From contig NC_059435.1 in NCBI RefSeq assembly GCF_021028975.2, forward strand, positions 78,616,001 through 78,680,000: a DNA stretch of 64,000 nucleotides. Direction: 5' to 3'. This stretch comes from Sphaerodactylus townsendi (Eukaryota). Shown here piece by piece: positions 3,618-53,400 of the stretch. Position numbers and translations under genes: made by a program. The notes beneath the pieces are model-generated. The model ran no database searches. It was given only the letters and a program-made list of their open reading frames with translations, and had not been told where the DNA came from. Each line of letters begins with the position of its first letter. The first letter of the stretch is position 1.

Positions 3618-12109
<8,492 letters not shown>

Positions 12110-26607: not shown

Positions 26608-26658
<51 letters not shown>

Positions 26659-26671
26659 CAGAGACAGACAG

Positions 26672-27899: not shown

Positions 27900-30800
27900 T
27901 GTCAAGAAGGGGAATCCCAGCGGGGCTTTGCTGGATCCCCCCTCCAACCTGGCAGGGTGGGTCGTGCGGTGGCTGCAGCCCTGACTGGGGCTTATGGGAA
28001 AGCAAGTGCTGGAGGGGATGGGTCTTGAACCTGGGCCTTCCAGGAAGAGACTGGGTGGGGGTGCTGAGGGGATCTCCTTCTCTGGATGCCTGTGGGAAAC
28101 CTTTTGCCAAACGCGGAGAGAGGAGGAGGAGGAGGAGGAGGAGACCCCGGAGGAGCCACAACCTGCTTCCCGCAGTGCTTGCTGTCTGTTCAGCTTATCC
28201 ATACTGAGGAAAATTCACTCTGTGTATGCTCAGGAGTACGACCCCCTAGCCACGAGTGTTTGGTAATCCTAATAGCTCCAGTTTTGGGGTTCTGTCCCGC
28301 CTGTTCTGCTCCGGCCGGGGGGGGGGGGGCTGTCCTGCCTGCCTATGCTCCCCTCCCCTCCAGGAGCTGGGAGTGCAACCCTGGCTCTTGCTGGTTAATC
28401 TCCAGTCTTCCCTCTGCTCTCATGGCCTACCTTCTAGGGTTCTTGTAAAATTATCTGACAAAGACATATGAAGAGTTTGGAATACTTTGGAAAAGCTCCT
28501 GGTCAATCCTGCTCAGAATTATGAGGAGAAAAGTGCAAGAGTGCCTCTGAACCCGCACAGAGTCCCTTTCCTTCCCATCTGAAGGAAGGTGGAGCATCAG
28601 GCCAGAGATGCCCTCAGACTCCTCCAGCTGGGAAGCAGCCGGGAGCCCTCCGCACGCCTCGCCTCGGTGCACGTGCAGAGGGGTCACCAGTGATTCATCC
28701 TCAGGATGTTCTGCAGAGGAGGAAGGGAGGGAGCTATTTTTAACGGAGGGCAGGCTGGGCGGGGCTCTGCAGTCTGTCTCGCTTCTTTGGAGAAACCCTG
28801 GATGGGGGGGGGGGGGCTGTTCACCTTCCCACCCTGAAGGGGCTGTGTGAGAGGCAGTGTGAGGTAGTGGTTAGTGCTCCTGGGGACACTGTCTGGTTTG
28901 AAACTCCCTAGATGACCTTGGACCGGACACCCTCTGCCTCCCCAGGGAAAGCGTGGTGCTGTCTCCGTGTTCTGGGTACTGAACTGCTGCCACCCCAAGC
29001 TCTTTGGTGGAAGGGGGGCTGAGACGCTGGCAAAGAGCTGCTCCCCCCCCCCTGCATTTCTGCTGCAGCAGACTCCTCCAGCCTGCCACTTTGTGGTGCC
29101 CACTGCGTGCCCCTCCCAGCTCCTCCCCTGGGGCAGCCCTGCTGGCATCAGAATTCTGCTGCCCTCCACTGCAGGGCGTGAGCGTGGATTCGACCCCTGC
29201 GCCGGCCGAGGGTCAGCCCTCCGAGAGCCCGGGCTCGGTTGTTGCTTCTTTTGGCCCTTGTGGCTGCAGCCATCTCTGACTCCTGGATGCCCAGGAAACT
29301 GCCCTCTGCCCACGTGTGTCACCGGTGTGGATTCCCCCGCAGGACGTCTCTTTCTGCCGATTGCTTAGAGTGCTCAGCCAGGCTGGCCGCTTGTGCCCGC
29401 AGCTGGGGCCCCTCCCAGCCAGTGGAGGCTCAGCACCAGACCTCGGCCTTCCTTTCCATATATCCTGCTCTTCTCAAAGCCGCTCCAGAAACGGTTCTCT
29501 CCCGCTCTGCTCTCTTGCTCCTCCAGCCCTTCGAGGTGGGCCAGGCTGAGTGGGAGACGGGGGAGGGCCAGGGCGGCTGAGGGCGCTGGTCGGCCACCCT
29601 GCGCGTTGGGGCCGGATTCTGGGCTACTTGAGTGGCAGGTGCTAGGAGAGGCTTCACCTGGTGCTTGGTGAGTGTGTGGGGGGGCTTTATCCTACAGCAC
29701 TGGGCCCCCAGCAGAGCCCAGCAGGCAACAGGTGGGTGGGTGTGGGGTAGTTGCTGTGGGGCAGGTATTGAGGGGAGCAAGACTCCCTCCCTCAGGTGTC
29801 TGCCAAAATACAAGTCCCCCTGCCCCCCCCCCCCGCCCTCAAGTGGTGTATGAAAAGAGAGGCGCATCCCAGCAAGTCCCAAATTGGGAACCTGGGGGGA
29901 GGGGGGGAGCTGCCTCTCCCACCTCTAGTTTATTTTGGCTGCCAGTTAGGGAGGGCTGTGCTGGAAGCCCCAGACAGCAGCAGATGGGGGGGCCGGGGGT
30001 GGGTGGCAAGGAGAGGGGCCCTGCTCTGCTTTCAGCCCCAGGATCCTTGGTCAGGGGCCCAACTCTGCCCCCCCCGTGGGGTGAAGCTGCAGGCAGACCT
30101 TTGCGGAGAAGCTCAGGCCAGGCAACGAAGGGTGGAAGAGGGCCGCCTCTGTGGTCCTTTCAGCCGCCTCATCCTCGGAACTGGAGGGTCTGCCTGCCGT
30201 GCTCTTGACCAATCACTCCCCCCATCCTGGGTCGGGGCGGGGGAGGGGCTCCGCAGAGGCCGGCGTGGTCCGTGGGGCAAGTGGGCCTGCGGTGACTTTG
30301 CCCTATAATCGCTTTAGCCGGATCAGGCGGGCCAGCCAGGGCTGGCCCCTGGAATGTGACATTGCTCCCCCCCCCCAGCACTGGCAGCCTGTAATTAATG
30401 CGGGGGGGGGGGTGCTGTGCCTCCTCTGACAAAGGTCTTTTGTCTGGTGGGAGGGGAGGGGCTCAGCCCCTCTCCTGGCTCTGAAGCGGCCGCCAGCCAA
30501 GGCAGGAGAGCCGAAGCGGCCTGGCGTGGGACGGGACGGAGGGCCACAGAGCGCGGGGGTGGGGTGGGGGGCGGGGGGCGCTGCTTTGGCCTGGCAAGGT
30601 AAGTCGGGGTTGCAGGAGGAGTGCGGGAGAGACACTGCAGGGCAGCCCCCGGCTGCAGTCTCTGCAGAGGGCATTCCAAATGCTCAATACTCCCAGCAGA
30701 GTGGAGCAGTGGTGCAGAGTGGTCAGAGCCCTGCTCAAATTGCTTGCTCTGTCAAGAAGCGCACTGGGTGACAACCATGGCTCAATTGCTTTTGAGTGTC

Positions 30801-34319: not shown

Positions 34320-35080
34320 GGGGGTGACGCAGACAGCCCGCCCTCCGGCCGGACAGCGCCGCCGAAAGCAGAGGGGGCGCAGGTGTGCCCCCCTCCCGCC
34401 CTCCCTCCCTCCCTCGCGGGCCGTGGCCCTGGTGGGAAGGGGGTTGCCGGGTCGCTCCGCGCCGCCCTCGGCCTACCTCGCTGGGTTGTCGCCTGCTCTC
34501 GTGTTCCGTCGGGCCGGCGACAGCCCGGTGAGGTAGGCCGAGGGCGGCGCGGAGGCGCCATGCGGACCGCCAGCCTGGGGGGAGAGGAGTGTGTGTGTGT
34601 GTGGGGGGGGGGGGGTGAGCGAGGGCCTTGTGAGGGCGAGTCACGGCCGGGCTTCCTCCTCGCCAGCCGGGCAGCATAAAGGCGGGTGGCGGCGGGGCCG
34701 GCGGGGCGGCGCGGCGGAGGTGAGCGGGGCGGGGGGCGCGTGTCCGGGCCGGCTGGGGCCGGAGCGGCGGCGGTGGCCGGGTCGGGTCCGGGCGCCTGTT
34801 GCTCTTGGGCGCCGGCTGGCCGTCGGCCGCCGCCAAGAGCAACAGGGCCTCGCCCGCCTCCGCCCGGCAGGACGCCGCCTCCGCCGCCCGCGAGGAGAGC
34901 AACGGGGCTGGGGGGGAGGGATTGGCTGAACGCCCCCCCCCCCCGCTTGGAAGATGCTTGGCAAAAGACCGGGAAGGACGTCCTGGCCGTCGGAGGCTTC
35001 CTGGGGAGGGTCGGGGGGGGGGGCTGGCAACGAGGGGCCGCCTGCCCGGATGCCCGCCCGACGCCACTTGGGGACCGGGA
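34320..35080 (+). promoter_or_regulatory. CpG island, likely SLC4A2 promoter and non-coding exon 1
   Basis: CpG-dense block just upstream of the ATG-bearing exon at 35301. Candidate donors are GAG|GTAGG (34533) and GAG|GTGAG (34720). Confidence 0.7.
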
Positions 35081-35399
35081 AGGAACCCCCCCTCCTCCTC
35101 CAGGTCGGATTGGCCCAAACTCCTGGAGGGTTACTTTTGGAGGGTTTTCCTGGGTTGTGCAGACTAGATGACCCTTGGAGATCCCGTCCAGCTCCGTTTC
35201 GATGTTTCTAGGCTTCTCCACCCTCACGCCCCCACCCCCCGCTGCCGCCCACGGGCACTGACTGGCGGCTGCCTCTTCTCTTCTCTGCCCCCGGTTCCAG
35301 GTTATGGTGCTCCCGTTCCACCCTCTGAGGCCCAGCGAGAAAGAGAAAGGCTGAGGAGGGATCACCCCCCCCCCCCGCCCCGCACGTCTCCTGTCCATC

Positions 35400-35450
35400 A
35401 TGAGTCGCTCCCAGGGCTCCTCCGAGCTCCACCGCATGGCCTTCAAGGGG
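35400..35450 (+). CDS. SLC4A2: SLC4A2 exon 2 coding part (AE2a N-terminus MSRSQGSSELHRMAFKG)
   Basis: Exon 35301-35450 has a polypyrimidine/CAG acceptor and a GTGAGT donor. It carries 17 codons in phase 0, as human AE2 exon 2 does, and resembles the chicken AE2 N-terminus MSRSPVSSELHH (recalled). Confidence 0.78.
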
Positions 35451-35771
35451 GTGAGTAGCATGGCTGGAGTGTCACCAGAACCAGACCCGCTGGGTGGGGC
35501 GGGGGGGGCACCTGCCAGAGGGTGAAGAGGTCTCTGCCACTCTAGGGCAGCGGCTTTGGGGGCAGGCCTTGGGGGGAGGGGGGGGCTGTCTGCCCCCCCC
35601 CCCCCGCTCGATCTGTGCTTGCTTGGGACAGTCAGGGTGGAACCTTATAGCCCATTTAGGGGGGGGGATGGTCTGGCTGTCCGTGGGGGTGGCCATTCTT
35701 GGGTTGGTTCCTCTTGGTGTGGGGTGAAGCAGGTAGGGGGACTCTTCCTTCTGGGCCTTGAACAGTTCGGG

Positions 35772-36390
35772 ATGTCAGAAGAGCCCTGCTGGGTCAGAGC
35801 AGTGAGGGGGGCCCATCTAGTCCAGCTTCCTGCCAAGTCATAGACCACTGGCTCCCTCTCCTGGGCCAACAGCACTGACAGAGAAGCCCCTCCTGGCCTG
35901 CTTCCTGGCTCTGGGGTCCAGAGGTTGACTGAAGGGGGAGGCTCCCATGGCTGGGAGGCCCTGTCAGACTCTCATCGGGGAATCTGTGGAGCTCCCTTGG
36001 AAAGCCGCCTCTACCTGTGCCCAGGAGCACCTCCCCCCACCCCCAGGCAGCGTCTGAATCCCTGGCTGTGTGAGGAAGCATTTCCTGGGGCCCTCCTGAA
36101 TTTGCTGCCCATCCTCTTCAAGACCTGGTATTGGGGGAGAGGGAGGAAAAACAGCCTTTCTCAACTGCCTCCACCGTGTGCCTAATGTTACGAGCCGGGA
36201 TCCCCTCTCCCCTTAGCTTTCCTGTTCTTAAAATGACAAACCCCAGACTCTCCAGCCTCTCCCCACAGAAAAGGGGTTCCAGCCCCCTCATAGTCTTGGC
36301 TGCCCCCGTCTGCACCTCTTCCAGCTCTGAAGTGCATTTGGAGATACGGGGACCAGAAGAAGCACACGGTATTCCAAACGGGGGCTGCAT
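35772..36390 (-). mobile_element. CR1-like LINE 3' fragment
   Basis: Minus ORF ...ELEEVQTGAAKTMRGLEPLFCGERLESLG resembles the CR1 ORF2 end, with a CCATCTAGTCCAGC 3' UTR motif. Confidence 0.75.
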
Positions 36391-38076
36391 TTCCCCTCCA
36401 TCTCCCCCGCTAAAATAAAGGAACTTGGGAAGACTCTGCTAGTTGAGTTTGGGCTCGGGGGTGGGGGTGGGGGTGTCCAAGGGAGTAGTGCATGCTGGGA
36501 TGTGTAATCCCTCCATACCTGAGCGGGAGGCGCCAGCGCATGTCCCTCGCAGGAGAGTGCTGGGACCGGAAAGCCCCTGGGAAGCTGCAGGAGGGCGCTC
36601 AGAGCCCCGTGTCCGTGGCGGCTGGTTGGCTGCAGTCTGGCCTTCCGTGGAGCCTCCCTGGGGCAGCCCCAGAACCAGTTCTCGGTTTCCTGCGTTCTGC
36701 CAGAAATGGACCAGTGCCTCTGAGCATGGGCCAGGTTTCTCCCCAGAGGCTAACAGGCTGCCACCACGCTTTGCATCTTGGGAATGACACTTCTTGGTTG
36801 CCTGCGGAGGCACCCCCTCGGGGACTTCTGTCCCATCTTGCCAGCCCCCCCCCCCCCCCTGAAGGCCCCATCCTGAGGTCTGAGCTGGAGGGAAGGCAAA
36901 AGGTTGGCATGGAGTTAGGGGGTCGGAACGCAGCACCCACGGGCAGATTCTGTGCTGAGCAGAAGAGTTGCCGGCTTCTAATTGCTGCCCGATCGCCCCT
37001 TTCGCCCCCTGCAAGGCGCCAGAGGTGGCCTCATCCGCACCCCACAGAGGCTGACTCCCAGACGGGCCCTCTGCTGCCCAGTGGGGGGGAGGGGCGCGCA
37101 CTTCGCGGGAGCATCCTGCCTGCCCCCGAAGCAGCTGCTGCTGAACAGCGTTTGCGGGCCTTGACGTGGGGCAGCTGGTGGCCGGGCGGGCGGGCTCTAC
37201 CTGCCGGGTCAGGGGTCGGCGAGCGGGCCTGTGGTGCCCAGGCAGGGTCTTGGCGAAAAGGGAGGGGCCGTCGGGGGCTGGCTTCGGTTCCGGAAATGCC
37301 CCCTGCTGCACACCTCTGGGGCCTCCTCCAGGTGGGCACTACATGGCACTGGATGGATGCCCTGGCCTTTTTTGGGAGGGGGGCTTCCTTGGAATGCTGC
37401 AGAGCCTGACCCTCTATGGAGCCTAGCCCCCCCCCCCCATACACACCTCTTGCCTCTCCCTCCTCCTCCTGTCTGGGCAGGGCCTGGGGGGGGGGGGTCC
37501 TTGCCTTTGGCCAGCCACTTTTGTGTGGAGGGGACAGCCCCCCCCCCGCATGCTGGTGTAGCGGATCCTGCTCCCAGGTGCAGCCAGTGGTGCTGCTGCG
37601 GCTGTGCTGTGTGAGCACGTGGCTCTTGTTTGCTAATAACACAGTGCCAGGCAGGCAGGCAGGCAGGCAATGCGGGGTGTGGGGAAGGGCGGGGGGAAGA
37701 GAGCTGGAGGTCTGAGTGAGGCTGCCCCCCCCCCCCCGGCCTCCTTCCTGTGATCGCCTGGGTGTGGCTGCCTTCGGACAGCATGCCCCAAGGTGGGCTG
37801 GCGGGCGCTTGCGCTTGGGTGGTGGCTCCGAATGCCAGCCCCCCCCCACCCCCATCTCAGCAGGCTGTAGTGGGTGACACAGTCTTCTTGAGCCGTGGTT
37901 CTGCCAAGGGGGGGGGCATCAGCTTCCACCTGTGTCCCAGCCCTGTTTTTAGCCGCCCCCCCTGACGATGGTGATGGGAGGGAAGCTGCAGGGATCTCTG
38001 GGCCTGAGCTGAGCAGCTTGACAGCTGGGGAGGGGAGGGGAGGGGGGGCTGTTTTGCCTTCTGAAATCTAGGCGTG

Positions 38077-38116
<40 letters not shown>

Positions 38117-38959
38117 AAGAGCTGCTGTCTTGTTTCTTCATTACAGCACTAAGATCCCAGCGTCCCTCTTGCTTCAGGGCTGCTGACCAGCGTAGCTAAA
38201 CATTCCAGCTAAAACCAAAGTTCAGACGGCCAGACCCGAAAGCCTTCCCCCCTGACAAGCTGCCGGCCATTTCATTTCGGAGCCCCTGAAGAGCCCTGGC
38301 AAACAGGCAGACTGTGCATCGCCCCTGAAGGCCTCCCCCCCTTTAGGGTGCCCCTGCCAGAGCTGGGGCTGGGATGGGAAAGGCCCGGGCTCCGGTCAAC
38401 AGCAGATGGGCCATCCCACGCGGCTGCCAGCGGAGGGCTGCCTGGTGACCGTAGTTGGCGCTCAGGGCCCCAGAGAAGGAGGGCAGGGGCTTCAAGATGG
38501 CAGCCAGCCCCTGGAACTGCTGAGCTGGCAAGCAGACTGGCAGCCGGCCAGGGGCTCCTCTGTGTGCAGAAGGCAGGCAGAGGTGGGAGCCGTGGCTGCT
38601 CCGGGGAGGCTTGTCTGGTAGCTGTTTGGCCCTTGCCCCTGCCAGGCAGGTGGCAGCACGGGGGGGGGCAACGGGGGGGGGGCTGGGAGGTCATGGCCAC
38701 CTGCCTCTGGCTGGTGATGAGCAGGCCTTGTGCTTGGCTCTGCCTCTGCGGCTGGCAGCCATGTTGTGAATGGACCCAAATGTGCAAAGTGGCCACAGGC
38801 CCCCAAAGGCTCCTGCCCTCTAGCCTTCAAGGAGGCACGAGGACCCCCTCCCCCTTTGAAAGGCTGGGGGTGTTGTCATGTGATGAGATGAGAGCACGTT
38901 TCCCCCTGGCCAGTCCGTTTTTTGACTGCACAGATGGAGGGGGGAGCCTTTTCCTCTCT

Positions 38960-39347
38960 GCCAGTGTTGTCAGTACTAGTCTGTATTTTTTATCTATGAC
39001 TTGAATGACGGCATAGAGGGCATGATCATCAAGTGTGCAGATGACACCAAATTAGGGGTGGTGGTGACAGGGTCAGGATTCAAAATGACCTGGACAGATT
39101 ATAGAGAGCGGGGCCAAAACTGACAAAATGAATTTCAACGGAGATAAATGTAAGATTCAACACTTAGGCAGAAAAAATGAAATGCACAGATATAGGATGG
39201 GTGACATCTGACTTGTGAACGGTGCACGTGAAAAGGATCCGGGAGTCTTAGCAGACCACAAACTGAACATGAGTCAGCAGTGTGATGCGACGGCCAAGAA
39301 AGCCAATGCGATTCTGGGATGCATCAATAAGAGTATAGTGTCTAGGT
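38960..39347 (+). mobile_element. CR1 fragment, abruptly truncated at a MITE
   Basis: KCADDTKLG...[30 protein letters not shown], colinear with the CR1 at 62665-63589 up to GTGTCTAG. Confidence 0.9.
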
Positions 39348-39495
39348 CAGGGGTAGGGAACCTGCGGCTCTCCAGATGTTCAGGAACTACAATTCCCATC
39401 AGCCCCTGCCAGCATGGCCAATTGGCCATGCTGACTGGGGCTGATGGGAATTGTAGTTCCTGAACATCTGGAGAGCCGCAGGTTCCCTACCCCTG
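39348..39495. mobile_element. Palindromic hAT MITE with discordant TSDs
   Basis: CAGGGGTAGGGAACCTGCGG...CCGCAGGTTCCCTACCCCTG forms a 148-bp hairpin. The flanks are GTCTAGGT and GGCTAGTC. Confidence 0.92.
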
Positions 39496-39932
39496 GGCTA
39501 GTCCCAGTTCTCTCAGAACTCTCTCAGACTCACCTGCCTCACGAGGTGTTTGTTGTGGGGAGAGGAAGAAAAGGAGCTCCTAAGCCACCTTGAGTCTCCT
39601 TGCAGGAGAGAAAAGGGGGGGGTATAGAAGAAGAAGAAGAAGAGTTTGGATTTATATCCCCCCTTTCTCTCCTGCAGGAGACTCAAAGGGGCTGACAATC
39701 TCCTTGCCCTTCCCCCCTCACAACAAACACCCTGTGAGTGGGGTGGGGCTGAGTAAACTCCGAGAAGCTGTGACCTTGCCCAAGGTCACCCAGCTGGCAT
39801 GTGTGGGAGTGTACAGGCTAATCTGATTTCCCCAGATCAGCCTCCACAGCTCAGGCGGCAGAGCGGGGAATCAAACCCGGTTCCTCCAGATTAGATACAC
39901 GAGCTCTTAACCTCCTACGCCACTGCTGCTCC
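39496..39932. mobile_element. Two tail-to-tail Squam3-like SINEs: 5'-truncated (+) 39496-39626 and near full-length (-) 39626-39932
   Basis: Both share the SINE core CACCTGCCTCAC..GGTGTTTGTTG. The (GAA)n tail of the minus copy abuts the plus copy. Confidence 0.82.
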
Positions 39933-40126
39933 TATAAATCCAAACCCTCCTTCTTCTCTGGGCATCGGCTCAGGTGAGGGTCAGGCAGGTGCTGGGATCT
40001 CTGCTTCAGGTCTCCCCCCCATCCACTGCTGAAATCGGACTCCGTTTGGCAAGGTTCCCACACTCTAGTGAAGGTGGGGGGCAGTGTTGCCTGCCCTGAT
40101 GCGGTTGGGGGGTCTCTGTCTTGCAG

Positions 40127-43100
40127 CTCAGAGGGGTCTGAGCGCAGCATCATGGAGGGGCCCTGTGTGGCCGAGGGGGGCTCTCCAGGGCGCTCCCTCA
40201 GCAAGTCCCAGCCAGGCCACCGCAGCTACAATCTGATCGGCAGCATGACTGGCGTGGAGCAGGCCCGCTACCAGAAAGTGCCCACCGACGAGTCCGAGGC
40301 TCAGACACTGGCCTCGGCTGACCTGGACTACATGAAGAGTGAGTGTGTGTGTGTGGGGGGGGGGGGGGGGGGGGGCACATGGACTTCCCCAGCCAGAGGC
40401 CTCCGCCCAAACCCTTTGAGAAGGGGGAGGTGGGCTTCCCCATGCAGGCCATTCCTCTCCCACTGGCTGGCCCTGACCCCTCCCTGTGCCGAAATGCGCC
40501 CAAGTGAATCACGTGGTGGGTTTGTGCACTTGACACTCTTTCTGCTTTGCTTCCGCTCTGTTGTCAAACTTCTGGTTGGTTGTGCCCCCCTGCGGTGTGG
40601 GCTCAGTTAATCCAAAGGCCCATCCGGTGACTCCTAGGGACTTTCTCCCCGTCGTCTGCCTCGTGTCCCGGTGGAGAAAGGCTGCAAGGAGCCCCTTCCG
40701 GACTCCTCCAGTGCACGACCGGCCTGGCTGCAGTGAGGCTGGCTGTCCGGCCTAGAGGGAGGGAGGGAGGAGCGGCCGCTGCCTTCCAAGGCTGCACTGG
40801 GGCAGGGGAGCCCTGGCTGAGCCTTCCCAGCATGGTGGCAGCGCCTGCAGGGTTTGCCCGCCTGGAGCTTTGCGAAGGGTGCCTGGCATCGGCTGGTGCA
40901 GGAAACCAAGAGAAGAGATCGGCGGCACTTTTGCTGGGAAAGAGGGCCGCTCCGAAGGCCTTTCCCCTTGCGGATCCCGGCCAGTTGCGAAATTAGAGGC
41001 CAGCGCTCCGAAGCCCACAGGTTCAGCTGCTGGGGGTAGCCAGACTTCGGCTGGGCAGATGGGCTGGGAAGCCCCCCCCCCCTTTGCCCTCTGGGAAGTG
41101 GAACTCAGAGCAGAGCCCCCACCTGGCACACAGGAAGCCAGCCTGACCCCATCTGGGTCTCTATGCTGAGCCGTGGGGGGGGGGCAGAAGATGGGGTGTG
41201 GGGGGGCGGAGCTGGCTTTCAGGCGGAACGTGGCATTGCAGGGCAGAGGGCACGGGGTTCTCCCTGCTCACAGAAGGAAGGGGGGCCGGGAACTCCCCAG
41301 TGTGAGTGGAAGCGGCTTGGCCCCTGTTATCTCACACACACACACCCCGCCCGCCCCCAGTCTCCTGAATTTAGGACCTGGCCCAAAGACGCAGTTGTTC
41401 AATGAAGGGGGACACGCGCGTGCGCGCACACACACACACGTGTGAATAACAGCCCCACCTTGGATGCCTGAGCCACCTCGGGGATCTCCTTAACAAGCCA
41501 GCCCTCCCCCCTCAAATGCCCACAGCTCTTTCTGCTCCATCGCTACAGGCCACCGGTTCGAGGACGTCCCCGGAGTGCGGAGGCACCTCTTTCGGAAAAG
41601 TGCCAAGGGACAGGTGGTGCACCTGGGCAAGGACCACAAAGAGCCCAGCGCACGGCAGCGCAAGCACGACCGGCAGCCCCACGAGGCGAGTGGCTGTGCT
41701 GGCGGGGGGGGGGGGGGCAAGCCTTCCACATTCAGAGACCGAGGACCTTTGTATGCCTTCTGCCGGGGGGGGGGGGCGCCAGGGGGAAGTCAGGTGTATC
41801 CACAGTGTGCTTTCCAGAACGCCCAGGTGTGGGGACAGGATACTGGGCTACAGGGACCTGCCCCACCCTGGGAGAAGTTGCCCCGTCTCAGATATCCTGG
41901 TCACATATGGATGGATGGATGGTCCTCTGCTTTTTTTGGGGGGGGGGACATCATTGTGGTGGGTGCAGCCCCAAGATGTACAAAGACGTGGACAAGAATT
42001 TGTGTGCTCTCAGGAAGAGGCCTACTGATGGCTATCTTTTGGGGGAGGGGCCAGGATTTGCCTTACAGGCTCTGCTAGGGAGCTGCCCCCCCCCCCAATG
42101 AGAGGCTTGGGGGTTCTCCCCTGCAGTTGACTCCTCTGGAGCAGTCTGGCCTGTCCACATTCTCCCTCCCTCCCTCCTCCAGCCTATGGAGGGAGAGGCA
42201 CGCACGGTGGGTCACCTGTAGAGGGTCACCTGTGGAAGGGCTCCGGGGGGGGGGGCTTTTTGCTCCATCCAGGGAGCTCTTCCAGGAGGGGCCCTTGCGC
42301 CCGCCTGCACACCCGAGGGTCTGATCTCTGGCGGATCTCTGGCTCAGGTGTTTGTGGAGCTGAACGAGCTGGTTCTGGACAAGAACCAGGAGATGCAGTG
42401 GAAGGAGACGGCGCGCTGGATCAAGTTTGAGGAGGATGTGGAGGAGGAAACGGACCGCTGGGGCAAGCCACACGTGGCCTCGCTCTCCTTCCGCAGCTTG
42501 CTTGAGCTGCGCAGAACCCTGTCGCACGGTAAGAGGAGGGGGGGGGTCTCCCGGGGTCAGCAGGCCCCCATCCCACTGTCCTTGCAAGGGGCAGGGAGGG
42601 GCTGCCCCCCAGAAGGCAGGTGGCTACAGCTGCTCCTCCTGCTCGTTCCAGGAGCCGTCCTTCTCGACCTGGACCAGAAGACGCTGCCGGGGGTGGCGCA
42701 CCAGGTGGTGGAGCAGATGATCATTTCCGACCAGATCCGTGCTGAGGATCGTGCCAACGTGCTGCGAGCCCTGCTCCTCAAGCACAGGTGAGACCCACGG
42801 GGGTGGACCCCCTGGCCCTCCTGCCTCCTAGGGGTCAAGGGGCATTCAGACCCCTGCTAAGCCACAGAGCACCAAGCCCGCAGAGGTGTGGTGGGTGGGC
42901 GGGCGGGCGGGCTCCTGCAGGGCCTGGCAGCAGGCGAGAGGAGGGGAAGGAAGGCCTGCTGCCACGGCCTTGGGAGGGCGAGCCACTACAGACTCGGGGC
43001 TTCCCTTGCAGCCACCCTTCGGACGAGAAGGACTTCTCCTTCCCCCGCAACATTTCAGCTGCTTCCCTCGGCTCGCTTCTGGGCCATCATCACAGCGCCA

Positions 43101-46100
43101 ACCATGTGGGGGAGGGGCCTGAGCCGGCCGTCACTGACCCCCTCATCGGAGGCCACTCCGGGGAGCACGAGACCCGGGTGGACATCGACAGGGAGGTGAG
43201 ATCCCCTCCCTGCACACCTTCTGGACCAGCGCCTGCCTGGCTCTCTTGAGGCCGGAGTGTAGCTGCCGCTGTTGGAAGAGAGGCAGGCTTTGGGGAGGTT
43301 CTGCCGGGACACTTGGGCTGGGAAGAGGTCACCATCCCCGCAGCCTATGTCCATGAGCGGCAGAACTGGGGCAGCCAAGAAGCTCTCTCCGTGTGGAGGT
43401 GGGATGTGGGTGAGGGCGGGGCTAAGAAGTCCCCCTGCCTGCAGGGTCCTCACACCCACGTCCTTCTGTGCAGAGGGAGGCCTTGTCCCCCACCCTCCCC
43501 GGCAGCATCACCAGGTCCAAGTCGAAGCACGAGCTGAAGTTACTGGAGAAGATCCCAGAAAATGCTGAGGCCACCGTGGTGCTTGTGGGTAAGGTGCTGC
43601 GAGGTCAGGGCACGCTGCCGTCCCCAGCTGAGTGGGGCAAGGGGGCACCAGTGCTCTCGAGGGGCTCGGGCGGAGTCTTGGGCTCCAGCCTCTCTCACCC
43701 GGATGCCCTCCGCTCGCTCGCAGGCTGCGTGGAGTTCCTGGACCAGCCCACGATGGCCTTTGTGCGGCTGCAGGAGGCCGTGCAGTTGGACGCTGTGCTG
43801 GAGGTGCCCATCCCGGTGCGGTTCCTCTTCGTGCTGCTGGGCCCGAGCAGCACCAACATGGACTACCATGAGATCGGCCGCTCCATCTCCACCCTCATGT
43901 CTGACAAGGTAGGCCCTGCCTGGTCCCCCACCGGCTCCCTGCCCTCCTGCGCGTGTCCCCTCGCCTCTCTGCTCAGCCTCCTCCCGTGTGCCCTCAGCAA
44001 TTCCACGAGGCTGCTTATCTGGCGGATGACCGGCACGACCTGCTCAACGCCATCAACGAGTTCCTGGACTGCAGCGTGGTCCTGCCGCCCTCTGAGGTGC
44101 AGGGCGAGGAGCTCCTCCGGAGCGTGGCCCACTTCCAGCGCGAAATGCTGCGGCGGAGGGAAGAGCAGGAGCGGCGCCTCCTCCTTGGGCTGGCTGCGGA
44201 GCCCAAGTCGCCAGAGGAGAAAGGTGGGTGGCAGAAGGGATGGCCCGCAGGGCAGGGCTGGCGCACAACTGGCCTGGCCTCTGCCTGCCTGCCCCCCCCC
44301 CCCCCCGCCGGGCTCCCCCTGTGGCTGATAAGTGGCTGGAGCATCTGAGGCTGCTTCTTAGGCTAGGAAAAAGAACTGGGGGGGGGGGACGAGGGTTTGC
44401 AACCACCTGCATTTTGTAAGAAAAACAGATGGGGAGCTCCCCCCCCCCCCGGTTTGTGTCCCGACTGTGGAGATCTTGGGAGCAGGGGGGTGGGGTGGGG
44501 GGCTGTCTGTGTGTCCTCTTGGGCAATTGTCAGGGTTCCACCAGAGAACTACTCAGTGTGGAGCCCACGCAGATCCATCCTGGGGAGGGACAAGGGTTGG
44601 GCTCTAGCACTTTCCCCCCACGCCACAGTCCTCTTTGTCTGCGAGGGGCGGGTGGGACACCCCCCCCCCCGCCTGCCTGCCTGCCAGCCATGCCTCCCTC
44701 CGCCTGCTTAGCGCTGCTGAAGCTGAAGATTGTGGAGGAGGAGGAAGACGACGATCCCCTACGACGCACCGGGCGCCTCTTTGGGGGCCTCATCCGGGAC
44801 GTCCGGCGCCGCTACCCCAAGTACCTGAGCGACTTCCGGGATGCGCTGAACCCGCAGTGCGTGGCTGCTGTGATCTTCATCTACTTTGCCGCGCTCTCTC
44901 CGGCCATCACCTTTGGAGGGCTGCTGGGTGAGCACACGGGAGAACGGGGGACACGAGCAGAGTGGCCCTTCGCAGCCTCCCCAGAGAAACATTGTCCCCG
45001 GCAGGAGAGGAAAATCACAGCAATGCAAGAAAGCGAAAACTGAGCAGCACCAACGACAGGGCTCAGTTCTGGCTGCCTCCACCCCTGAGTCCACACACGG
45101 GGGCTTCTCTGGAAGGACCCAGGCTGGGATATGGGGGCTCACTAGCCCTAAAGCCAGGCCTGGCCCCGCCCCACCAGCCTGGCCCATTTTCAGCCGGCAG
45201 AAAGCTGTTTTCTGCAGACTGGAAAAGGTAATGGGGCTGGGGCCGCAGGGGGGGTGGAATGCTGATAGGCCAAATGCCCAGCTGAGCATGGATCTGAGGG
45301 GAAGGGGAGGTACAGCAATCTAAGAAATGAAATGAAAGACGTTGCTGGCAGGAGCTGGAGTGCCACATGCCTCCAAACTCAAGAAGTTAGGTTTGCAACC
45401 GAGTAAACGAGGAGAACAGCAGCCAAAGAACCAGATCGACGCCCCAAGTCCAGCGTCACCCTCGGGTGCAGGCCAGGCCTAGGGCAGGAGTTGGAGCGGG
45501 AAGTCTCTCTCTCTCTCTCTCTCTCTCTGACCTCCAGGCAGATGTCTGTATTGACTGCTGGGTCAGATCCGTTGGGGCCCATCTAGTCTGGCAGACTTCT
45601 CACTGCTGCCGGGCGCAGTCTGCCTTCCTTGCTGGCACGCAGGGCGGATTGCAAAGTCCTCACAGCAGTGCAATAAACACGCCACAGCCCAGCACTGACC
45701 ATAAGCCAGGCAACAGAGCAGGATGGCAGAAACAAAGAACAAACTCAATGCATGAAAACGCTGCCAGGTCTCCAATAAGTGGGAGCAGCAGCAGCCTCCA
45801 GGCGAGGAACAAGGCAGCAGCGTGGAGGGAGAGGGCAAAGGGAGTGCTGGTGGGGGTGGGGGCTTGAACCAGAGCTAACCTGGCCTGCTCTGAGGAGTTG
45901 CTGGCGTAGGCTACGGGGCAGGTCACTACACATACCCAGTGGGGTCCCACTTTGTCCCTGACCACACAGAGGCTACGAGGCCAGTGCTCTCTGCCACGCC
46001 TGCAATGTCAGACGTGCAGTTCCTCATTCTGCCCCCCCCCTCCAGGCGAGAAGACTCAGGGGCTGATCGGGGTCTCAGAGCTGATCATCTCCACCTCCGT

Positions 46101-49100
46101 GCAGGGAATCGTCTTCTGCCTGCTGGGGGCTCAGCCCCTCCTCATCATCGGCTTCTCGGGGCCCCTGCTGGTCTTTGAGGAGGCCTTTTTCACAGTGAGT
46201 GGGGGGACGCCTGCCTGTCATTCCTGGGGGGGGGGGGTCTCCAAGGGCCTTGGGCTGCCAGAGAAATGTGTGTGTGTGTGTGTGTGTGTTGGGGGAGGGG
46301 GGGGGGGGTCTCCAAGGGCCTTGGGCTGCCAGAGAAATGTGTGTGTGTGTGTGTGTGTGTGTTGGGGGAGGGGGAGATGGCATGCCTGCCTTGTAGCTAC
46401 AATTGGGGAAACACAGTGGTTTGCAAAAGCTGTGCCCTGCGCACACACCGCCTCCCAGATTCCAGAGCCAGCGTGGCCACGTGGTCGAGAGGGGCAGGCT
46501 CTGATCCAAAGAGCTGGATTTGACTCCTTGCTCCCCCGCAACAAAATCTTATCAAGGCAGAGTGATAAAGGAGAAGGGGGAAGGGCTTTGATCCTACAGC
46601 AGCCCCCACCCACCCTGCAAAGGGGAGCAGAGTGGGAGGGCGGCCTGGCCTGGCCTGGGGGAGCAACAGCTGCCTGCCTGCCTGTCTGCCCTCAGTTCTG
46701 CAGATCGCAGGACCTGGACTACCTGGTGGGCCGCGTCTGGATCGGCTTCTGGCTGATCCTCATTGTGCTGGTGATGGTGGCCTCCGAAGGCAGCTTCCTG
46801 GTGCGCTTCGTCTCCCGCTTCACCCAAGAGATCTTCGCCTTCCTCATCTCCCTCATCTTCATCTACGAGACCTTTTCGAAGTTGGTCAAGGTGCTGGCAA
46901 GGGGCACAACACAAGGCACGGGTGGGGTGGGGGCTCTGTGGGCCGTGCAGAAGTCTGGTGGCTGCTGCTACGTGGGGCGGGGCGGGGCGTTCACTCGCGA
47001 GAGGAGGAGATTCCCCTTGGAGGAACTCCGCGGGCTCTTTCTTCCGGGCAGATCTTCCAGGAGCACCCCCTCCACGGCTGCATCAAGGCCAACGGCACCG
47101 AGGCGGGCCAGGAGGAGGACAGCCCAGTGGTCGTGGCGAACACGACGGCCAGCCGAGCCGCTTCCCAAGTGAGGGGGCAGCCCAACACGGCCCTGCTGTC
47201 CCTCGTCCTCATGGCCGGCACCTTCTTCATCGCTTTCTTCCTGCGCAAGTTCAAGAACAGCCGCTTCTTCCCGGGACGGGTGCGTCCGTCGGGGCTGCAG
47301 GCGGGTGGCCATAGAGCGGGGGATCCCAGCGTGGTGACCGTGGGGCCCAGGATGCCCCCAAGTGTTTTCAGAAAGTGGGGGGGGGGGGGCGGGGGCAAGT
47401 TGTGCTCGTGCACAAGATTTTGCAGGGTTGCTTCAGCAGCTGCTGCTGGCCCAGCACAAAGATCGCCACTGTCTGGTGAAGGCCAGAGCTGTGGAAATAC
47501 TTTCAAGCCACCTCTTCCACGTTCTGCCTGACACACTGAAGAGTGAGGCTCCTTCACGGACGTTGTGTGGTTGGCCCCGCCTCCCATGGCAGCCATTGTG
47601 TAGTTGGATCCACCAGAGGTGTCCACAGGTTGGGGCCCCCTGTCCTGGAGGCGAAGCGCTGCAGATTCTCTGTAGTGGCTTGGCCAGGGCAGGAGCACTC
47701 TGCACATACTCAGAGACTTCACTTCTTAGGCCAGCTGTACACGCTGGCGGGGGGCGAGGGCCCAGATCTCCTGGGCTGTCCTGGAGAGACAAGGAGGAGG
47801 CTGGCGGGGCTCTGTTGCTGAGGGGATGTCTCTGGACAGGTTCGCCGGGTGATTGGCGACTTTGGGGTCCCGATTGCCATCCTCATCATGGTCTTGGTGG
47901 ACTACAGCATCCAGGACACGTACACACAGGTCAGTGGGGCAGGTTTCCTTCTTCTGAGTGCCATCTTTGATTCTTCCGGAGGTTCGTGGAATGGGGGGGA
48001 CGGGACCAAAAGACTCCTGACATCCCACAAGGGAGGACTCACCGGCTGTCCCCTCTTGCCCTCAGCTGCCCAGAGAAGAGTGGAATGCCGGGGGGGGGGG
48101 GGGGGGAAATGTCTGTCAGGCGAACAGCTTCTTGTGCCTCCTGCAGAGGAATTGGGGGGGTGGGGAGCAGTTGCCACCTGTAGCCCTGGGCATCAGTTGT
48201 ACACACACACCCACCCACACGCCGAGTCCCCGGGCACTGCTGTGCTCTCAGCTCCTGCCCCCCTGGTCGCCCCTGCAGAAGCTTTCGGTGCCCCGAGGCT
48301 TCTCCGTCACGGACCCTGAACAGCGGAGCTGGGTCATCAACCCCCTCGGGGGGAAGGATCCCTTTCCCGTCTGGATGATGGTGGCCAGCGCCCTCCCCGC
48401 AGTCCTGGTCTTCATCCTCATCTTCATGGAGACCCAGATCACCACGTGAGTACAGGTCCCGCCCAGCCCACCGCTTGACAGGGTCGGCTGCAGCCCTCGG
48501 GGCCCTAACCTCCCCCTCCCCCCAGGCTGATCATCAGCAAGAAGGAGCGCAAGCTGCGGAAGGGCTCTGGCTTCCACCTGGACCTCCTGCTCATTGTAGC
48601 GCTGGGGGGCTTCTGTGCTCTCTTTGGGCTGCCCTGGCTGGCAGCGGCCACGGTGCGCTCCGTCACTCACGCCAACGCCCTCACCGTCATGAGCAAGTCC
48701 GTGGCCCCCGGAGACAAGCCCAAGATCCAGGAGGTGAAAGAGCAGCGCGTCACAGGCCTGCTGGTGGCCATTCTCGTGGGTGAGTCTTTACACCTTGGCC
48801 CGTTCCCCTTCCACTGGGGGCGTGGCTGGCTTTGCCAACAGACGGCCACTACCTTCGGCACAACTGAGAGGGGGTCAGAGGCCAGCCGGCCAGGCCTTCC
48901 CATGCGGCATCAAGCTCTGCTGGAAGGGCTTGCAGAGCCATGATCTCCCACTGGCTCAGCAAACAGGGGTGCAGAACTTGTCCGGGGGGAGCCCAGGGAA
49001 CCTGTTTCGTGGCCTGCTTGGGAAGCAGCCCCCTTCCTTGCTCCAAGCCCCCCCCCCCAATCAGCACTTCTGAGCAGATCCGCCCCTGCCGCAGGCTTAT

Positions 49101-49879
49101 CCATTGTGATCGGGGACCTCCTGCGCAAGATCCCCCTGGCAGTGCTCTTTGGGATCTTCCTCTACATGGGAGTCACCTCCCTGAACGGGATCCAGTTCTA
49201 CGAACGCCTCCACTTGCTGCTCATGCCTCCCAAGCACCACCCGGACGTGACCTATGTCAAAAAGGTCAGCTGCTGGGCCTCCGCGGGCAGGGAGGGTCGT
49301 CTCCACGAAGCGGGCCCTGGGGACCCTGCTCTGGAGCAGCAGGCCCCTGTGGAAGGGGGGGGGGGGGAGGACCGGGCATGTGCCTCCTGCTGCAAACGGG
49401 GGCCCACGCTCCACCACAGTATCCAGGAGTCCAGCGGGGGGAAGGGGGCAGCCCCAAAACTGTCTGGCCCACACGTGCCCCCTCCCTCTGCCCCCACAGG
49501 TGCGGACGCTGCGCATGCACCTCTTCACGGGCTTGCAGCTGGCATGCCTGGCTGTGCTGTGGGCCGTCATGTCCACGGTGGCCTCCTTGGCCTTCCCCTT
49601 CATCCTCATCCTCACGGTGCCCCTTCGCATGTGCCTGCTCAGTCGCATCTTCACGGAACGAGAGATGAAATGTGTAAGTTGTGATTGCGGGGTGGGGTGG
49701 GGGGGAGGCCACCAACTCAACCAGCTGGGCCGAGTAAGCCAAAGCATCCCCCCCCCCCTCCTCCTCCTGCTGGACTAAGCCCTCTCTCTCCTGGCCAGCT
49801 GGATGCAAATGAGGCAGAGCCTATCCTGGACGAAAGAGAAGGTGTGGACGAATACAACGAGATGCCCATGCCCGTGTGA
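40127..49879 (+). CDS. SLC4A2: Anion exchanger 2 (AE2), exons 6-23
   Basis: Exons 40127-40338, 41549-41685, 42348-42528, 42652-42787, 43012-43195, 43474-43588, 43724-43908, 43998-44223, 44712-44927, 46046-46194, 46696-46890, 47052-47279, 47840-47929, 48279-48445, 48526-48779, 49095-49264, 49500-49673 and 49799-49879 are all phase-consistent. Motifs include [26 protein letters not shown] and METQIT, ending [10 protein letters not shown]. The product is 1024 aa from ATG 40152. Confidence 0.97.
41686..42347 (+). other. SLC4A2: GC-AG intron of SLC4A2
   Basis: The exon ends ...CAGCCCCACGAG|GCGAGT. This donor gives the conserved ...PHE|VFVELNEL junction. Confidence 0.85.
46226..46375. repeat. Tandem duplication of about 72 bp containing (GT)n
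   Basis: GGTCTCCAAGGGCCTTGGGCTGCCAGAGAAAT(GT)nTGGGGGAGGGG occurs twice. Confidence 0.88.
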
Positions 49880-50431: not shown

Positions 50432-53400
50432 TCATGCCTGGATCCACAGGCCTCTTAGCTTCTGGCTCAGGTACCGCTTGACCCCCTCCACGCCGCTCAC
50501 CCGCTGCAGGTCCATGTAGGGTAACTGCATTGAAGGAGAAGGCCGAGGCCGGCAGTGAAGTTTCCTCTCCTCCAGAACAATTCTCAGAACTAAGCCTACC
50601 TCAGCCTGCTCAAAACAAAGAAAGGGCGTGGGGTCCCCCCTGCAGGAAGGGGGCAGTCTCCTGTGATCACTCAGCAGGGGCTCCAGCAGGGAAGACAGCC
50701 TAGCAGCCTCCCCCGGAAACACCTTCCCTTCAGGAGGGAGGGAGGGAGGGGAAGTCCCCCTTACCTGCACCAGGTTGTAGCCTAACAGGCGGAGGTGCCG
50801 ATCACGCATCGCTCGAGAGCCCACCAGCACAGCTGAGTTCTGGCAATAATGCCATTCGTCGTTAACAGACAGCACCACTCTGGGAGAGGAGATGAAAGAT
50901 GGGGAGGGCGGCCACCGGCATCTGATCCTCCCCCAAGAGTCCCCGCCCCCACCACAGAGGGTTCTGAGGCAGGGGGGGGGGGGCTTCATGCTCCCAATTG
51001 CTTCAGCCAGGGAGTGGGGGGTTGGTGTGAGGTGGCAGCAGGTGAAGGCGACTCCTCAAGCCAGACGTCCTTGGGCAAGGATACAGGTGCAGCAGGCGAG
51101 GGGGTGGGTGGGGCTAAAACAGCCAATAATTCCCTGCTCCTTTCTGGAATGCCTAAGAATTGTTTGCCCAACAGGCCCAGCAGAAACTCCCTTGCGCGGC
51201 CCCACATACCAGCGCCGCCTCCTCATGGCGCCAGGCACGGAGCCCCCTTTCCCAGGCAGCAGCAGCAGCAGCTGAGGCAAGCTGACTGCTTCTCCTCGGG
51301 AACTGTGAACACAGCATCACGGCCACCCAAGCAATCCCCGCCCCCGCCCTTTTCTCCTTCTGTGAGATGGGCAGCAATTATTTGATCCAAAGAGAAGTGT
51401 AACAGAGGTGACTGAAGCGAAGGTGAAACTGAGACGCTCCAAGCCCCGAAGCTGGAAAACCGCCCCCCACCCCACGACCCTTGGCCAAAAGATCCCAGCA
51501 ACTACCTGTGGATCGCCTCAGCCTTCTGCGTCCCGTCCGGCGCTGCTTCTGGGGAGGTTGCTGGTGCTGGCAGGGGCTGCTGGGGCTCCGTGCCCAGGGT
51601 GGGGGGACGGAAGCGGGTGGCTGATTCTGCTGTGCCACACAGAGACGCAGCCAGAGAACTGTTCAGAACAGCTGTGTGGGGCTCCTCCCCCTGACTCCAC
51701 CCACCACCCTGGGGGGCCCATGAGTGCAAGCTCTCCTCTGGCAAAAAGCGTCTTCCTGCCAAGGGACGGCTGTCCAGCCCCTGCGGCCTGGAGAGCGGCT
51801 CCCTCCGTGTTTCCAGCACAGGGCGTCCAGTCAGGGTCTGGAGGGCTTCAAGGGGGGCTCCAGCCCAGGACGATCGTGGGAGTAGAGCACCGGAATGAGA
51901 GAACTGGAGCAAGAAATCTAGTGAGAGAGAAGGACAGGGCCAGACAGGCCAGAGGAGGACCAAGGAGAAAGTCAGGCCGGAGAAGGACTCGGTCCCTCCA
52001 AATACTGACTTTCAAGCCCCTGCCCCCCTTCCCCCCGCCCCGTCCCTTCATGGGAAGGACGTAATGATAACATCAGGAAAGTTGTGAGGCAGGGGGAGGG
52101 GACTGCATCTTATTCCTAGCAAAAATAAACGACCAGAACTCTTCTTTCAAAACAATGCGCTACAAGCAACAGTGTGGTGGACGATATCTGGGGACAGAAG
52201 GGAAGCAAAGGCTAACCCCCTCCTATTTCCTGGCCCACCCTCATCCCACAGACTATGCAACCCACGAGTAAAGACACACAAATTCCTCATACAGCAAGGC
52301 TGGGGACTGGGAGATATTATGCAACTGAGCTGCTGCAGATATTTGGATGCAGGAAAGATCACAAGCAGGCTGTTTAAGCCTTTGAAGCGGAGTTAAAAGT
52401 AAAAGAAAGCCTTGAAAACCTTAACTCTCTGCCTGGCTCATCTAACTAATTTTCTGGACAAAGAACCTGATGAGAAACTGCAGAGTTCTTGACGAATGTT
52501 CTGCCGCCAAAGACAAATCACCTCCAAAGAGGGATCAAAGAGTATGCTGTCGAAATAAGGAACTGGGGGTGTTAATCTAATAGTCATAATAACAAAGAGG
52601 CCTTTGGAAAGCTCAGGGGCTGGCAGACCTGGGCACATCCAACGGAGCCACACCCACAAGCGCCAGCCAGGGCTTCCAAGCAGCACTTCTGGCTACACAA
52701 GGCTTGGGTAGGGAAGCCCTATTCCCTTCCTGGTCTGTTAACAAGCTGCCAGAGAAGTCTACCTGGCCAACTCAGAGGCGTGCTTCGGCCTGGTTTTAAA
52801 AATGTTTCGGAGGCAAATGGAGCTACCTTCCTGTCCTCTTCTGCGCCTAAGTGCTGCTGCTCCCTGCCCACAGGATCGAGAAACTCCCGGCCCTTTTCAA
52901 GATGGCTCTCACCTGTGCAATACCCCGGGGGCAGCACTTCATCCTGCCGATAGCCTTCTTCTCCCACAAGCTGCCACAGAGCCTCTGCTACCAGGCCTTT
53001 ACAGCTAGGGAAGTAAAGGGGCAGAGGGGAGTCAGCACAGCAGAGACACAGAAGGACACAAGCCGGGGGAGGGGGGTACTTCACAACAAAACATGTAAGA
53101 GGGAGGAACAGTCAACGAGAATCAGCAAGGGAGCAGCCAGCAAAAACGGTGGCAGAAGATAATGCAGAGAAGGAGAGACAAATCTCCCTCAGTGGCACAA
53201 CTAAGGGGGCTTCTCTTCGGTTGTTCCCATTCAGCCTCCAATGGCAGTGGAGGCAACCAAAGCAGGACTTCTTGAGACAAGAGGAGAGGATGGGTGGGTT
53301 CATATGGGAGGACACAGAACCTGCGTGGCATAGTGCACTCTAACCTGGGGAACTGGGTTTGATTCCACACTCCGCCAATTTTGCTGTGGAGGCTTATCTG

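What the first reader, a model, noticed from the sequence alone, without database searches (positions are those of the whole stretch)
35301..40338. SLC4A2 appears to lack exons 3-5, leaving an AE2c-like truncated exchanger behind a uORF
Seen: exon 2 (ATG 35400, 17 codons, phase 0) is followed by exon 6 (acceptor at 40127, phase 2). Nowhere in 12500-40126 could I find the conserved exon 3-5 peptides (ERFEEIL, YHRQSSxHIHHPLS, VQFFLQED). Splicing exon 2 to exon 6 gives MSRSQGSSELHRMAFKGLRGV*, with the stop at 40139-40141. Ten nt later lies a strong-context ATG (atcATGg, 40152) that opens a 1024-aa frame through exon 23. Established: rodents make an N-terminally truncated AE2c1 isoform initiating in exon 6. 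Inference: either this lineage converted its AE2a start into a uORF and makes only an AE2c-like protein, or the assembly collapsed here.
Basis: partly seen in the sequence, partly recalled or inferred. Interest (0 to 1): 0.8.

Follow-up and report, generated by a model that had tools for sequence, protein, structure and literature searches.

The report
Assembly hole inside the SLC4A2 gene
The anion exchanger gene SLC4A2 looks as if it had lost three coding exons in this assembly, but sequencing-read contigs of the same species disagree with the assembly at two places inside the gene, so the loss is most likely an assembly omission and not biology.

Summary
Exon 2 (35301-35450, ATG 35400) and exon 6 (40127-40338) of SLC4A2/AE2 are present. 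Nothing like exons 3-5 occurs anywhere in the 64 kb. Joining exon 2 to exon 6 shifts the frame (stop at 40139-40141), and an ATG follows at 40152.

The assembly is not faithful here. Contigs of three DNA runs from two samples of the same species differ from it in two ways:
- All carry 15 extra bases after 40235. These restore the conserved NERRR motif that the window's exon 6 lacks.
- All break at 37118/37150. They continue from both sides for 397 and 392-537 bases of unique, full-depth sequence that the window does not contain.

Exon 2's acceptor, a 16-codon uORF, the AE2a start codon and the donor all align with a distant sauropsid. Exon 6 keeps the acceptor phase that needs exon 5. Exons 6-23 are intact.

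Best reading: sequence carrying exons 3-5 was dropped from the assembly in this GC-rich intron. I could not fetch the overhanging letters, so the exons themselves were not seen. A real AE2c-only lineage is not supported. Interest is low.

The parts
35301..35450 (+). SLC4A2 exon 2 (AE2a first coding exon); coding part 35400-35450, 17 codons, ends in phase 0
   Evidence: Sequence. Aligns with L001 exon 2, including acceptor, ATG and donor. P0007 N-terminus MSRSQ.SS..H.
35304..35354 (+). Conserved 16-codon uORF in the 5'UTR part of exon 2 (MVLPFHPLRPSEKEKG stop)
   Evidence: Same length, and SEKEKG plus stop aligned, in L001.
35451..37118 (+). Start of the intron after exon 2; colinear with read contigs
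   Evidence: X1 record 1 (34600-36856) and X2 record 10 (35365-37118).
37119..37149 (.). 31-nt block covered by no listed read contig; the break where assembly and reads part
   Evidence: table 8. Left contigs (X1 rec 2, X2 rec 10) end their match at 37118 and run on 397 nt unlike the window. Right contigs (X1 rec 3, X2 rec 11, X3 rec 20) start their match at 37150 with 392, 537 and 408 unmatched nt before it. The contigs' depths equal those of neighbouring single-copy contigs. The block is unique in the window.
37150..39095 (+). Intron sequence colinear with read contigs, except for the (GT)18 repeat at 38079-38115
   Evidence: table 8 (37150-38068, 38124-39095).
39096..39909 (.). Transposon block (CR1 fragment, palindromic MITE 39341-39497, two inverted SINE pieces) not bridged by any read contig; a second place where sequence could be missing
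   Evidence: Contigs stop at 39095 and restart at 39910, and depth runs into the millions. The CR1 piece also hits L001.
40127..40338 (+). SLC4A2 exon 6; starts with one base of a split codon (needs two bases from exon 5)
   Evidence: PDB match to human AE2 215-274. Same phase and same first base as L001 exon 6.
40235..40236 (+). Site where the window lacks 15 nt (AACGAGCGCAGGCGC = NERRR) that all three DNA runs carry
   Evidence: table 4: depth_with equals depth in X1, X2 and X3. All relatives have (N/H/Q)ERRR here.
40152..40154 (+).
   Evidence: Sequence. No evidence of use.
41548..49876 (+). Exons 7 to last of SLC4A2 (tblastn match limits, splice sites not refined); Band_3_cyto and HCO3_cotransp domains; no stops
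50435..50989 (-). RAP-domain exon of the downstream, tail-to-tail neighbour (FASTK-like)
   Evidence: Pfam RAP at E 6.9e-9. L001 has FAST_1/FAST_2 in the same position.

Best explanation
This is an ordinary, intact SLC4A2 (AE2) gene whose exons 3-5 are absent from the assembled sequence, not from the animal. Part of the GC-rich, homopolymer-rich region between exon 2 and exon 6 was dropped when the genome was assembled.

Shown:
- The demonstrated break is at 37119-37149.
- The assembly also dropped 15 nt inside exon 6.

Inferred:
- The missing piece carries the rest of intron 2, exons 3, 4 and 5, and the start of intron 5.
- The real gene encodes a normal AE2a N-terminus (exon 2 to 3 to 4 to 5 to 6).
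- The transposon block 39096-39909, which no contig bridges, is a second possible place for missing sequence.
For: (contigs of three DNA runs, two samples, same species, 0-2 base differences per kb of unique sequence):
1. After 40235 every run has 15 extra nt encoding NERRR, at full depth. The window's exon 6 is the only sequence seen that lacks this motif.
2. Contigs match up to 37118 and from 37150. They continue for 397 nt (left; same length in X1 and X2) and 392/537/408 nt (right) of sequence that fits nothing in 34600-40450.
3. These contigs' mean depths (22.8, 24.7; 54.2, 62.6; 106.6) equal those of neighbouring single-copy contigs. The longer form is therefore homozygous in both samples.
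4. The overhangs are unique sequence. Contigs that run into transposons stop at once, as at 39095 and 39910.
5. Several homopolymer lengths also differ, which points to an error-prone consensus.

Constraint on the gene:
- Exon 2's acceptor, uORF, ATG and donor align with a distant sauropsid.
- Exon 6's acceptor phase and first base are as in L001.
- Exons 6-23 carry no stop.
- Exons 3-4 are strongly conserved in fish, mammals and three other sauropsid sequences.
- The neighbouring FASTK-like gene matches the L001 arrangement.

Another sauropsid assembly (L001) also has a gap and lacks exons 8-23 of this gene, so this locus is hard to assemble. Missing GC-rich genes are a known problem in bird assemblies (titles and abstracts listed, e.g. 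PMC5550943, PMC5632298, PMC9021737).
Against: - The overhanging letters were not shown by the tool and could not be fetched. Exons 3-5 of this species were therefore never seen, and that they lie in the hole is inference.
- The runs are coded, so I cannot tell whether either sample is the assembled individual. A private deletion allele in the assembled animal is not excluded.
- In two relatives (L001, L007) exons 4-5 lie within about 0.7 kb of exon 6. Here read contigs confirm about 1.9 kb before the transposon block (37150-39095) and 217 nt next to exon 6 (39910-40126) without those exons. Either intron 5 is about 3 kb long in this species or more sequence is missing in the transposon block.
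- No RNA run was on record.
Confidence: 0.8

Rival explanations
1. A real deletion allele in the assembled individual. That animal, or one of its haplotypes, carries a deletion of several kb that removes exons 3-5. The sequenced samples carry the intact form, and the assembly picked the deleted haplotype.
For: The window's junction is clean sequence with no N. The identity of the assembled individual relative to samples S1 and S2 is unknown. Sample S1 appears heterozygous at 36972, with the window's base as one allele (table 3: the contigs of X1 and X3, runs of one sample, disagree there), so haplotype differences do exist.
Against: Both samples are homozygous for the long form by depth. The same window also lacks 15 conserved nt in exon 6 that both samples have. 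Two independent damaging deletions in one gene on one haplotype are less likely than assembly error. Homopolymer disagreements point to consensus errors.
Confidence: 0.09
2. Lineage-wide loss. The species has lost exons 3-5, AE2a translation ends after 21 codons as a uORF, and the protein starts at ATG 40152, like rodent AE2c1.
For: No exon 3-5 similarity in 64 kb. An ATG with a purine at -3 and G at +4 lies at 40152. Some sauropsid ORFs also read ME(G/E) at this point (P0001, P0004). AE2c1 is a working exchanger in the mouse (PMC4664831).
Against: Two samples of the species carry extra unique sequence in the intron and the NERRR codons. Exon 2's start and donor are conserved. Exon 6 keeps eight open codons upstream of the ATG and the exon-5-dependent phase.
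Confidence: 0.04
3. Exons 3-5 are in the window but have diverged beyond recognition, lying somewhere in 35451-40126.
For: Exon 5 is poorly conserved and would be hard to detect. Long open frames exist in the GC-rich intron, e.g. 36492-37409.
Against: Exons 3 and 4 hold some of the most conserved AE2 N-terminal motifs, and a fish query finds them in L001. Nothing is found here even with a sauropsid query at E<0.5. The 305-aa intron ORF looks nothing like AE2. Exons 2 and 6 are only moderately diverged.
Confidence: 0.02

Closest known systems
Rodent AE2c1 / AE2c2 isoforms of Slc4a2 (promoter c in intron 5; AE2c1 lacks the first 198 residues of AE2a)
   Same: A protein starting at ATG 40152 would lack the same N-terminal part, including the Glu-rich stretch that sets the pH sensitivity of AE2a against AE2c1 (PMC4664831).
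   Different: In rodents AE2c is an extra isoform from its own promoter, beside intact AE2a/b. Here the truncation would come from missing exons. The reads indicate that sequence is missing from the assembly, and no promoter or transcript evidence exists.
'Missing' GC-rich genes and exons in sauropsid genome assemblies
   Same: The window is 60% GC overall, and about 60-68% around the break. It is full of long G and C runs. Read contigs disagree with it in homopolymer lengths, in a 15-nt piece and at a break point. A second sauropsid assembly has a gap in the same gene. Papers listed describe the phenomenon in birds (titles and abstracts only were read).
   Different: Here there is no N gap. 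The assembly is joined seamlessly across the omission, so it mimics a clean deletion.
Canonical vertebrate SLC4A2 (AE2a) gene structure
   Same: Exon 2 with 17-20 codons ends in phase 0. Exon 6 starts with one base of a split codon. Band_3_cyto and HCO3_cotransp domains are present, with a FASTK-like gene downstream tail to tail.
   Different: Exons 3-5 and five codons of exon 6 are absent from the assembled letters.

Membership tests
SLC4A2 / AE2 (SLC4 anion exchanger) | Band 3 cytoplasmic domain (PF07565) | tested here: met
   window:42345-42533 scores E 1.1e-31.
SLC4A2 / AE2 (SLC4 anion exchanger) | HCO3- transporter membrane domain (PF00955) | tested here: met
   Four exons score E 1e-25 to 1e-37 and cover profile positions 1-490. 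tblastn covers P0049 to its last residue.
SLC4A2 / AE2 (SLC4 anion exchanger) | AE2-type N-terminal region rather than AE1 or AE3 | tested here: met
   Exon 6 matches human AE2 at E 1.8e-16 against 0.0046 for AE3. Exon 2 matches the sauropsid AE2a start.
SLC4A2 / AE2 (SLC4 anion exchanger) | Conserved neighbourhood (FASTK downstream, opposite strand) | tested here: met
   RAP domain on the minus strand at 50435-50989. L001 has FAST_1/FAST_2 in the same place.
SLC4A2 / AE2 (SLC4 anion exchanger) | Exons 3-5 (ERFEEIL, YHRQSSHHIHHPLS and FFLQED motifs) | tested here: not met
   Absent from the window. The assembly is shown to be incomplete here, so this says nothing certain about the animal.
AE2c-type N-terminally truncated isoform | Own promoter and first exon in intron 5, with a transcript starting there | not testable with these tools
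   No run on record as RNA. X4 may be RNA but gives nothing at exon 6.
AE2c-type N-terminally truncated isoform | Translation start at a Met in exon 6 | tested here: inconclusive
   An ATG at 40152 exists. The frame is also open upstream to the acceptor, as in an internal coding exon.
Assembly omission (artefact) | Independent reads of the same species contradict the assembled join | tested here: met
   Break at 37118/37150 with unique overhangs at full depth in three runs from two samples, plus 15 nt missing at 40235.
Assembly omission (artefact) | The missing exons are present in the reads | not testable with these tools
   The overhang letters were not printed. This species' contigs are not in the protein collection.

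The most novel reading that the evidence does not exclude
The assembled individual, or the whole species, really carries a SLC4A2 allele without exons 3-5. The conserved AE2a start then acts only as an upstream ORF, and the cell makes an AE2c1-like exchanger from ATG 40152. This would be a natural equivalent of the rodent AE2c-only state, with altered pH set-point.
Probability: 0.08. Interest if true: 0.55.

Novelty: not a real feature. Interest (0 to 1): 0.1.

Why it matters
If the loss were real, it would be a natural experiment on the AE2 N-terminus, which sets the pH sensitivity of the exchanger. As it stands, it is a warning. This assembly contains seamless omissions, without N, in GC-rich genes. 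These can imitate exon loss, in-frame deletions of conserved motifs and new uORFs. Other 'gene damage' findings in this genome should be checked against reads before they are believed.

Tried and rejected
1. Extended exon 2. Read past the donor, the frame gives ...VSSMAGVSPEPDPLG, which resembles the start of exon 3 (SPEADALGPG in P0007). A donor-like GT at 35522 would join exon 6 in frame. I rejected this: the base-level alignment with L001 puts the true donor at 35451, and the resemblance lies in the intron.

2. The long intron ORF 36492-37409 (305 aa) has no AE2 likeness.

3. Fetching the overhang letters through proteins called on the runs' contigs failed:
- A word search with the ORF window:37151-37855(-) found nothing.
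- An exact look-up of ten ATG-ORFs from verified parts found none in the collection.
- A word search with the exon-6 ORF found only other species, at most 86% identity.
So this species' contigs are not in that collection.

4. A word search with exon 4 of L001 gave two mammalian proteins and one other sauropsid:
- The contigs L003-L005 were fetched for one mammalian protein. They were recognised as mammalian and left aside; nothing was compared or searched with them.
- L006, the other sauropsid, has exons 3 and 4 about 400 nt apart and does not overlap the window.

5. blastn of the window's intron against L001 introns aligned only exons 6 and 7 and a CR1 piece. The relatives are too distant to place the break by homology.

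6. No repeat or microhomology explains the 37119-37149 block.

The N run in L001 was left as it is.

8. The nature of run X4 stays open. It may be RNA: one contig matches only from the exon-2 acceptor onward.
Full report
**What is in the window**

The window has no N and is 60% GC, with many long G or C runs. SLC4A2 lies on the + strand.

Exon 2 runs from 35301 to 35450:
- The acceptor AG is at 35299-35300.
- A 16-codon uORF occupies 35304-35354.
- The main ATG is at 35400, followed by 17 codons (MSRSQGSSELHRMAFKG).
- The donor GT is at 35451.

Exon 6 runs from 40127 to 40338. Its translation from the ATG at 40152 matches human AE2 residues 215-274 (E 1.8e-16; AE3 only 0.0046).

Downstream, tblastn with a full-length fish AE2 (P0049) finds every part from residue 150 to the last residue, between 40050 and 49876, with no stop. 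Single exons hit Pfam Band_3_cyto and HCO3_cotransp. A RAP-domain exon on the minus strand at 50435-50989 marks the FASTK-like neighbour, as in the related locus L001. This is the orthologous AE2 locus.

**Checking the observation**

An exhaustive profile search with exon 6 returned P0007, a 327-residue sauropsid AE2 N-terminus. Its genomic locus L001 (GCA_045781085.1) gives the reference structure:

| Exon | L001 coordinates | Phase |
|---|---|---|
| 2 | 10001-10060 | ends in 0 |
| 3 | 15954-16119 | 0 to 1 |
| 4 | 26157-26374 | 1 to 0 |
| 5 | about 26578-26701 | 0 to 2 |
| 6 | starts with one base, C | 2 at its start |

The window's exon 2 aligns with L001's in acceptor, uORF, ATG and donor. 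The window's exon 6 starts in the same phase with the same base.

Exons 3-5 are not in the window:
- No conserved peptide turns up in any of the six frames.
- tblastn finds nothing for P0007 or P0049 residues about 18-150 at E<0.5.
- The same queries detect exons 3 and 4 in L001 and exon 4 in L007, so the search had the power to find them.

I did not build or search a joined model; exons were searched one at a time by reference.

**What the reads say**

The look-up of sequencing runs found four runs of one organism in one study, none on record as RNA. I laid their contigs on 34600-40450. The three deep runs (X1 and X3 from one sample, X2 from another) match unique parts of the window with 0-2 base differences per kb, so they are the same species. 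They contradict the window in three ways.

1. After 40235 each run has AACGAGCGCAGGCGC at full depth (21.9 of 21.9, 56.1 of 56.1, 83 of 83).
   - The insertion reads N-E-R-R-R between ...HRSYNL and IGSMTG...
   - Every relative has (N/H/Q)ERRR there.
   - The window is the only sequence without it.

2. The contigs break at 37118/37150.
   - From the left, X1 record 2 (670 nt) and X2 record 10 (2151 nt) match up to 37118, then run on for 397 nt that fit nothing in the stretch.
   - From the right, X1 record 3, X2 record 11 and X3 record 20 match from 37150 and carry 392, 537 and 408 unmatched nt before it.
   - I checked the orientation of minus-strand records on the exon-6 contigs (X1 record 8 against X2 record 16).
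   - The 31 nt at 37119-37149 are covered by no listed contig and are unique in the window.
   - The mean depths of these contigs equal those of neighbouring single-copy contigs, so the longer form is homozygous in both samples.
   - The overhangs are unique sequence, not a young transposon. Contigs that enter transposons stop at once, as at 39095 and 39910.

3. Homopolymer lengths differ at 34932, 35012/13, 37426, 37485, 37537 and 38659.

The rest of the intron (34600-37118, 37150-38068, 38124-39095, 39910-40329) is colinear with the contigs. The transposon block 39096-39909 is bridged by no contig.

**Interpretation**

At least about 0.9 kb of unique sequence that both sampled animals carry is absent from the window between 37118 and 37150. 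The same gene has a second, 15-nt omission that removes a conserved motif.

The gene otherwise shows every sign of constraint on a normal AE2a protein:
- a conserved exon 2 with its uORF, start codon and donor;
- an exon 6 acceptor phase that needs exon 5;
- eight open codons upstream of ATG 40152;
- intact exons 6-23.

The simplest account is that the assembler dropped the piece with exons 3-5. The exons' presence in the hole is inference, because I could not read the overhangs. The one read-laying run did not print them, and this species' contigs are not in the protein collection.

One point does not fit neatly. In L001 and L007 exons 4-5 lie within about 0.7 kb of exon 6. Here, contigs confirm 37150-39095 and 39910-40126 without those exons. 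Either intron 5 is about 3 kb long in this species or further sequence is missing inside the unbridged transposon block. An earlier first-stage note on this window (s1-743328) suspected that block as a breakpoint.

**Rivals**

- *Private or heterozygous deletion allele in the assembled animal.* This cannot be excluded because the runs are coded. It would need two independent damaging deletions on one haplotype, while two other animals are homozygous intact.
- *Lineage-wide loss with an AE2c-like protein.* This is contradicted by the reads and by the conservation of exon 2.
- *Diverged exons hidden in the intron.* This is contradicted by the positive controls.

**Comparison with what is known**

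Mouse has AE2a, b1, b2, c1 and c2. AE2c1 lacks 198 N-terminal residues and needs a more alkaline pH for activation. Humans lack the c forms (PMC4664831). A protein starting at 40152 would resemble AE2c1, but nothing here shows that it is made.

The pattern matches the known difficulty of assembling GC-rich sauropsid loci (papers listed; only titles and abstracts were read). L001, another sauropsid assembly, has an N gap after exon 7 and lacks exons 8-23 of this very gene. I left that gap unfilled.

**Housekeeping**

Contigs L003-L005 were fetched for a protein that turned out to be mammalian. They were set aside and not used.

**Verdict**

The feature is most likely an assembly omission (confidence about 0.8), and interest is low.

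Noticed in passing
window 35304-35354; L001 about 9918-9968: A 16-codon uORF in the 5'UTR part of SLC4A2 exon 2 is conserved in length and in its C-terminal SEKEKG-stop between the window and a distant sauropsid. It may be a conserved translational control element of AE2a.
   Followed up: partly
L001 28260-36747 (N run 29253-29452): The GCA_045781085.1 assembly has a gap after SLC4A2 exon 7 and shows no exons 8-23 before FASTK. The same GC-rich gene is incomplete in a second sauropsid assembly. The gap was not filled.
   Followed up: partly
window 34932, 35012-35013, 37426, 37485, 37537, 38659: Homopolymer run lengths differ between the window and read contigs, which suggests consensus errors of the assembly in G/C runs.
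   Followed up: no
window 35299-35375 (run X4, record 28): A 297-nt contig of the small run X4 (depth 62) matches the window only from the exon-2 acceptor onward. Its first 220 nt fit nothing in 34600-35298. It looks like a spliced exon 1-exon 2 RNA contig, which would put exon 1 upstream of 34600 and make X4 an RNA library.
   Followed up: no
window 38980-39940: A transposon cluster lies directly upstream of exon 6: a CR1 reverse-transcriptase fragment, a perfect palindromic MITE (39341-39497), and two inverted pieces of a tRNA-derived SINE around a (GAA)n tract. The elements are extremely abundant in the genome, with contig depths in the millions.
   Followed up: partly
L001 26575-26590: The gene model behind P0007 uses the acceptor TTGCAG|GAGGAC and so skips the conserved FFLQ codons. 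The upstream acceptor CTCAG|TTCTTCTTGCAG would give the canonical IQFFLQEDE.
   Followed up: no
L006 80-885: In another sauropsid (Logan contig of SRR31860999), SLC4A2 exons 3 and 4 are only about 400 nt apart, separated by a repetitive GC-rich intron, against about 10 kb in L001. Intron 3 size is therefore very variable.
   Followed up: no
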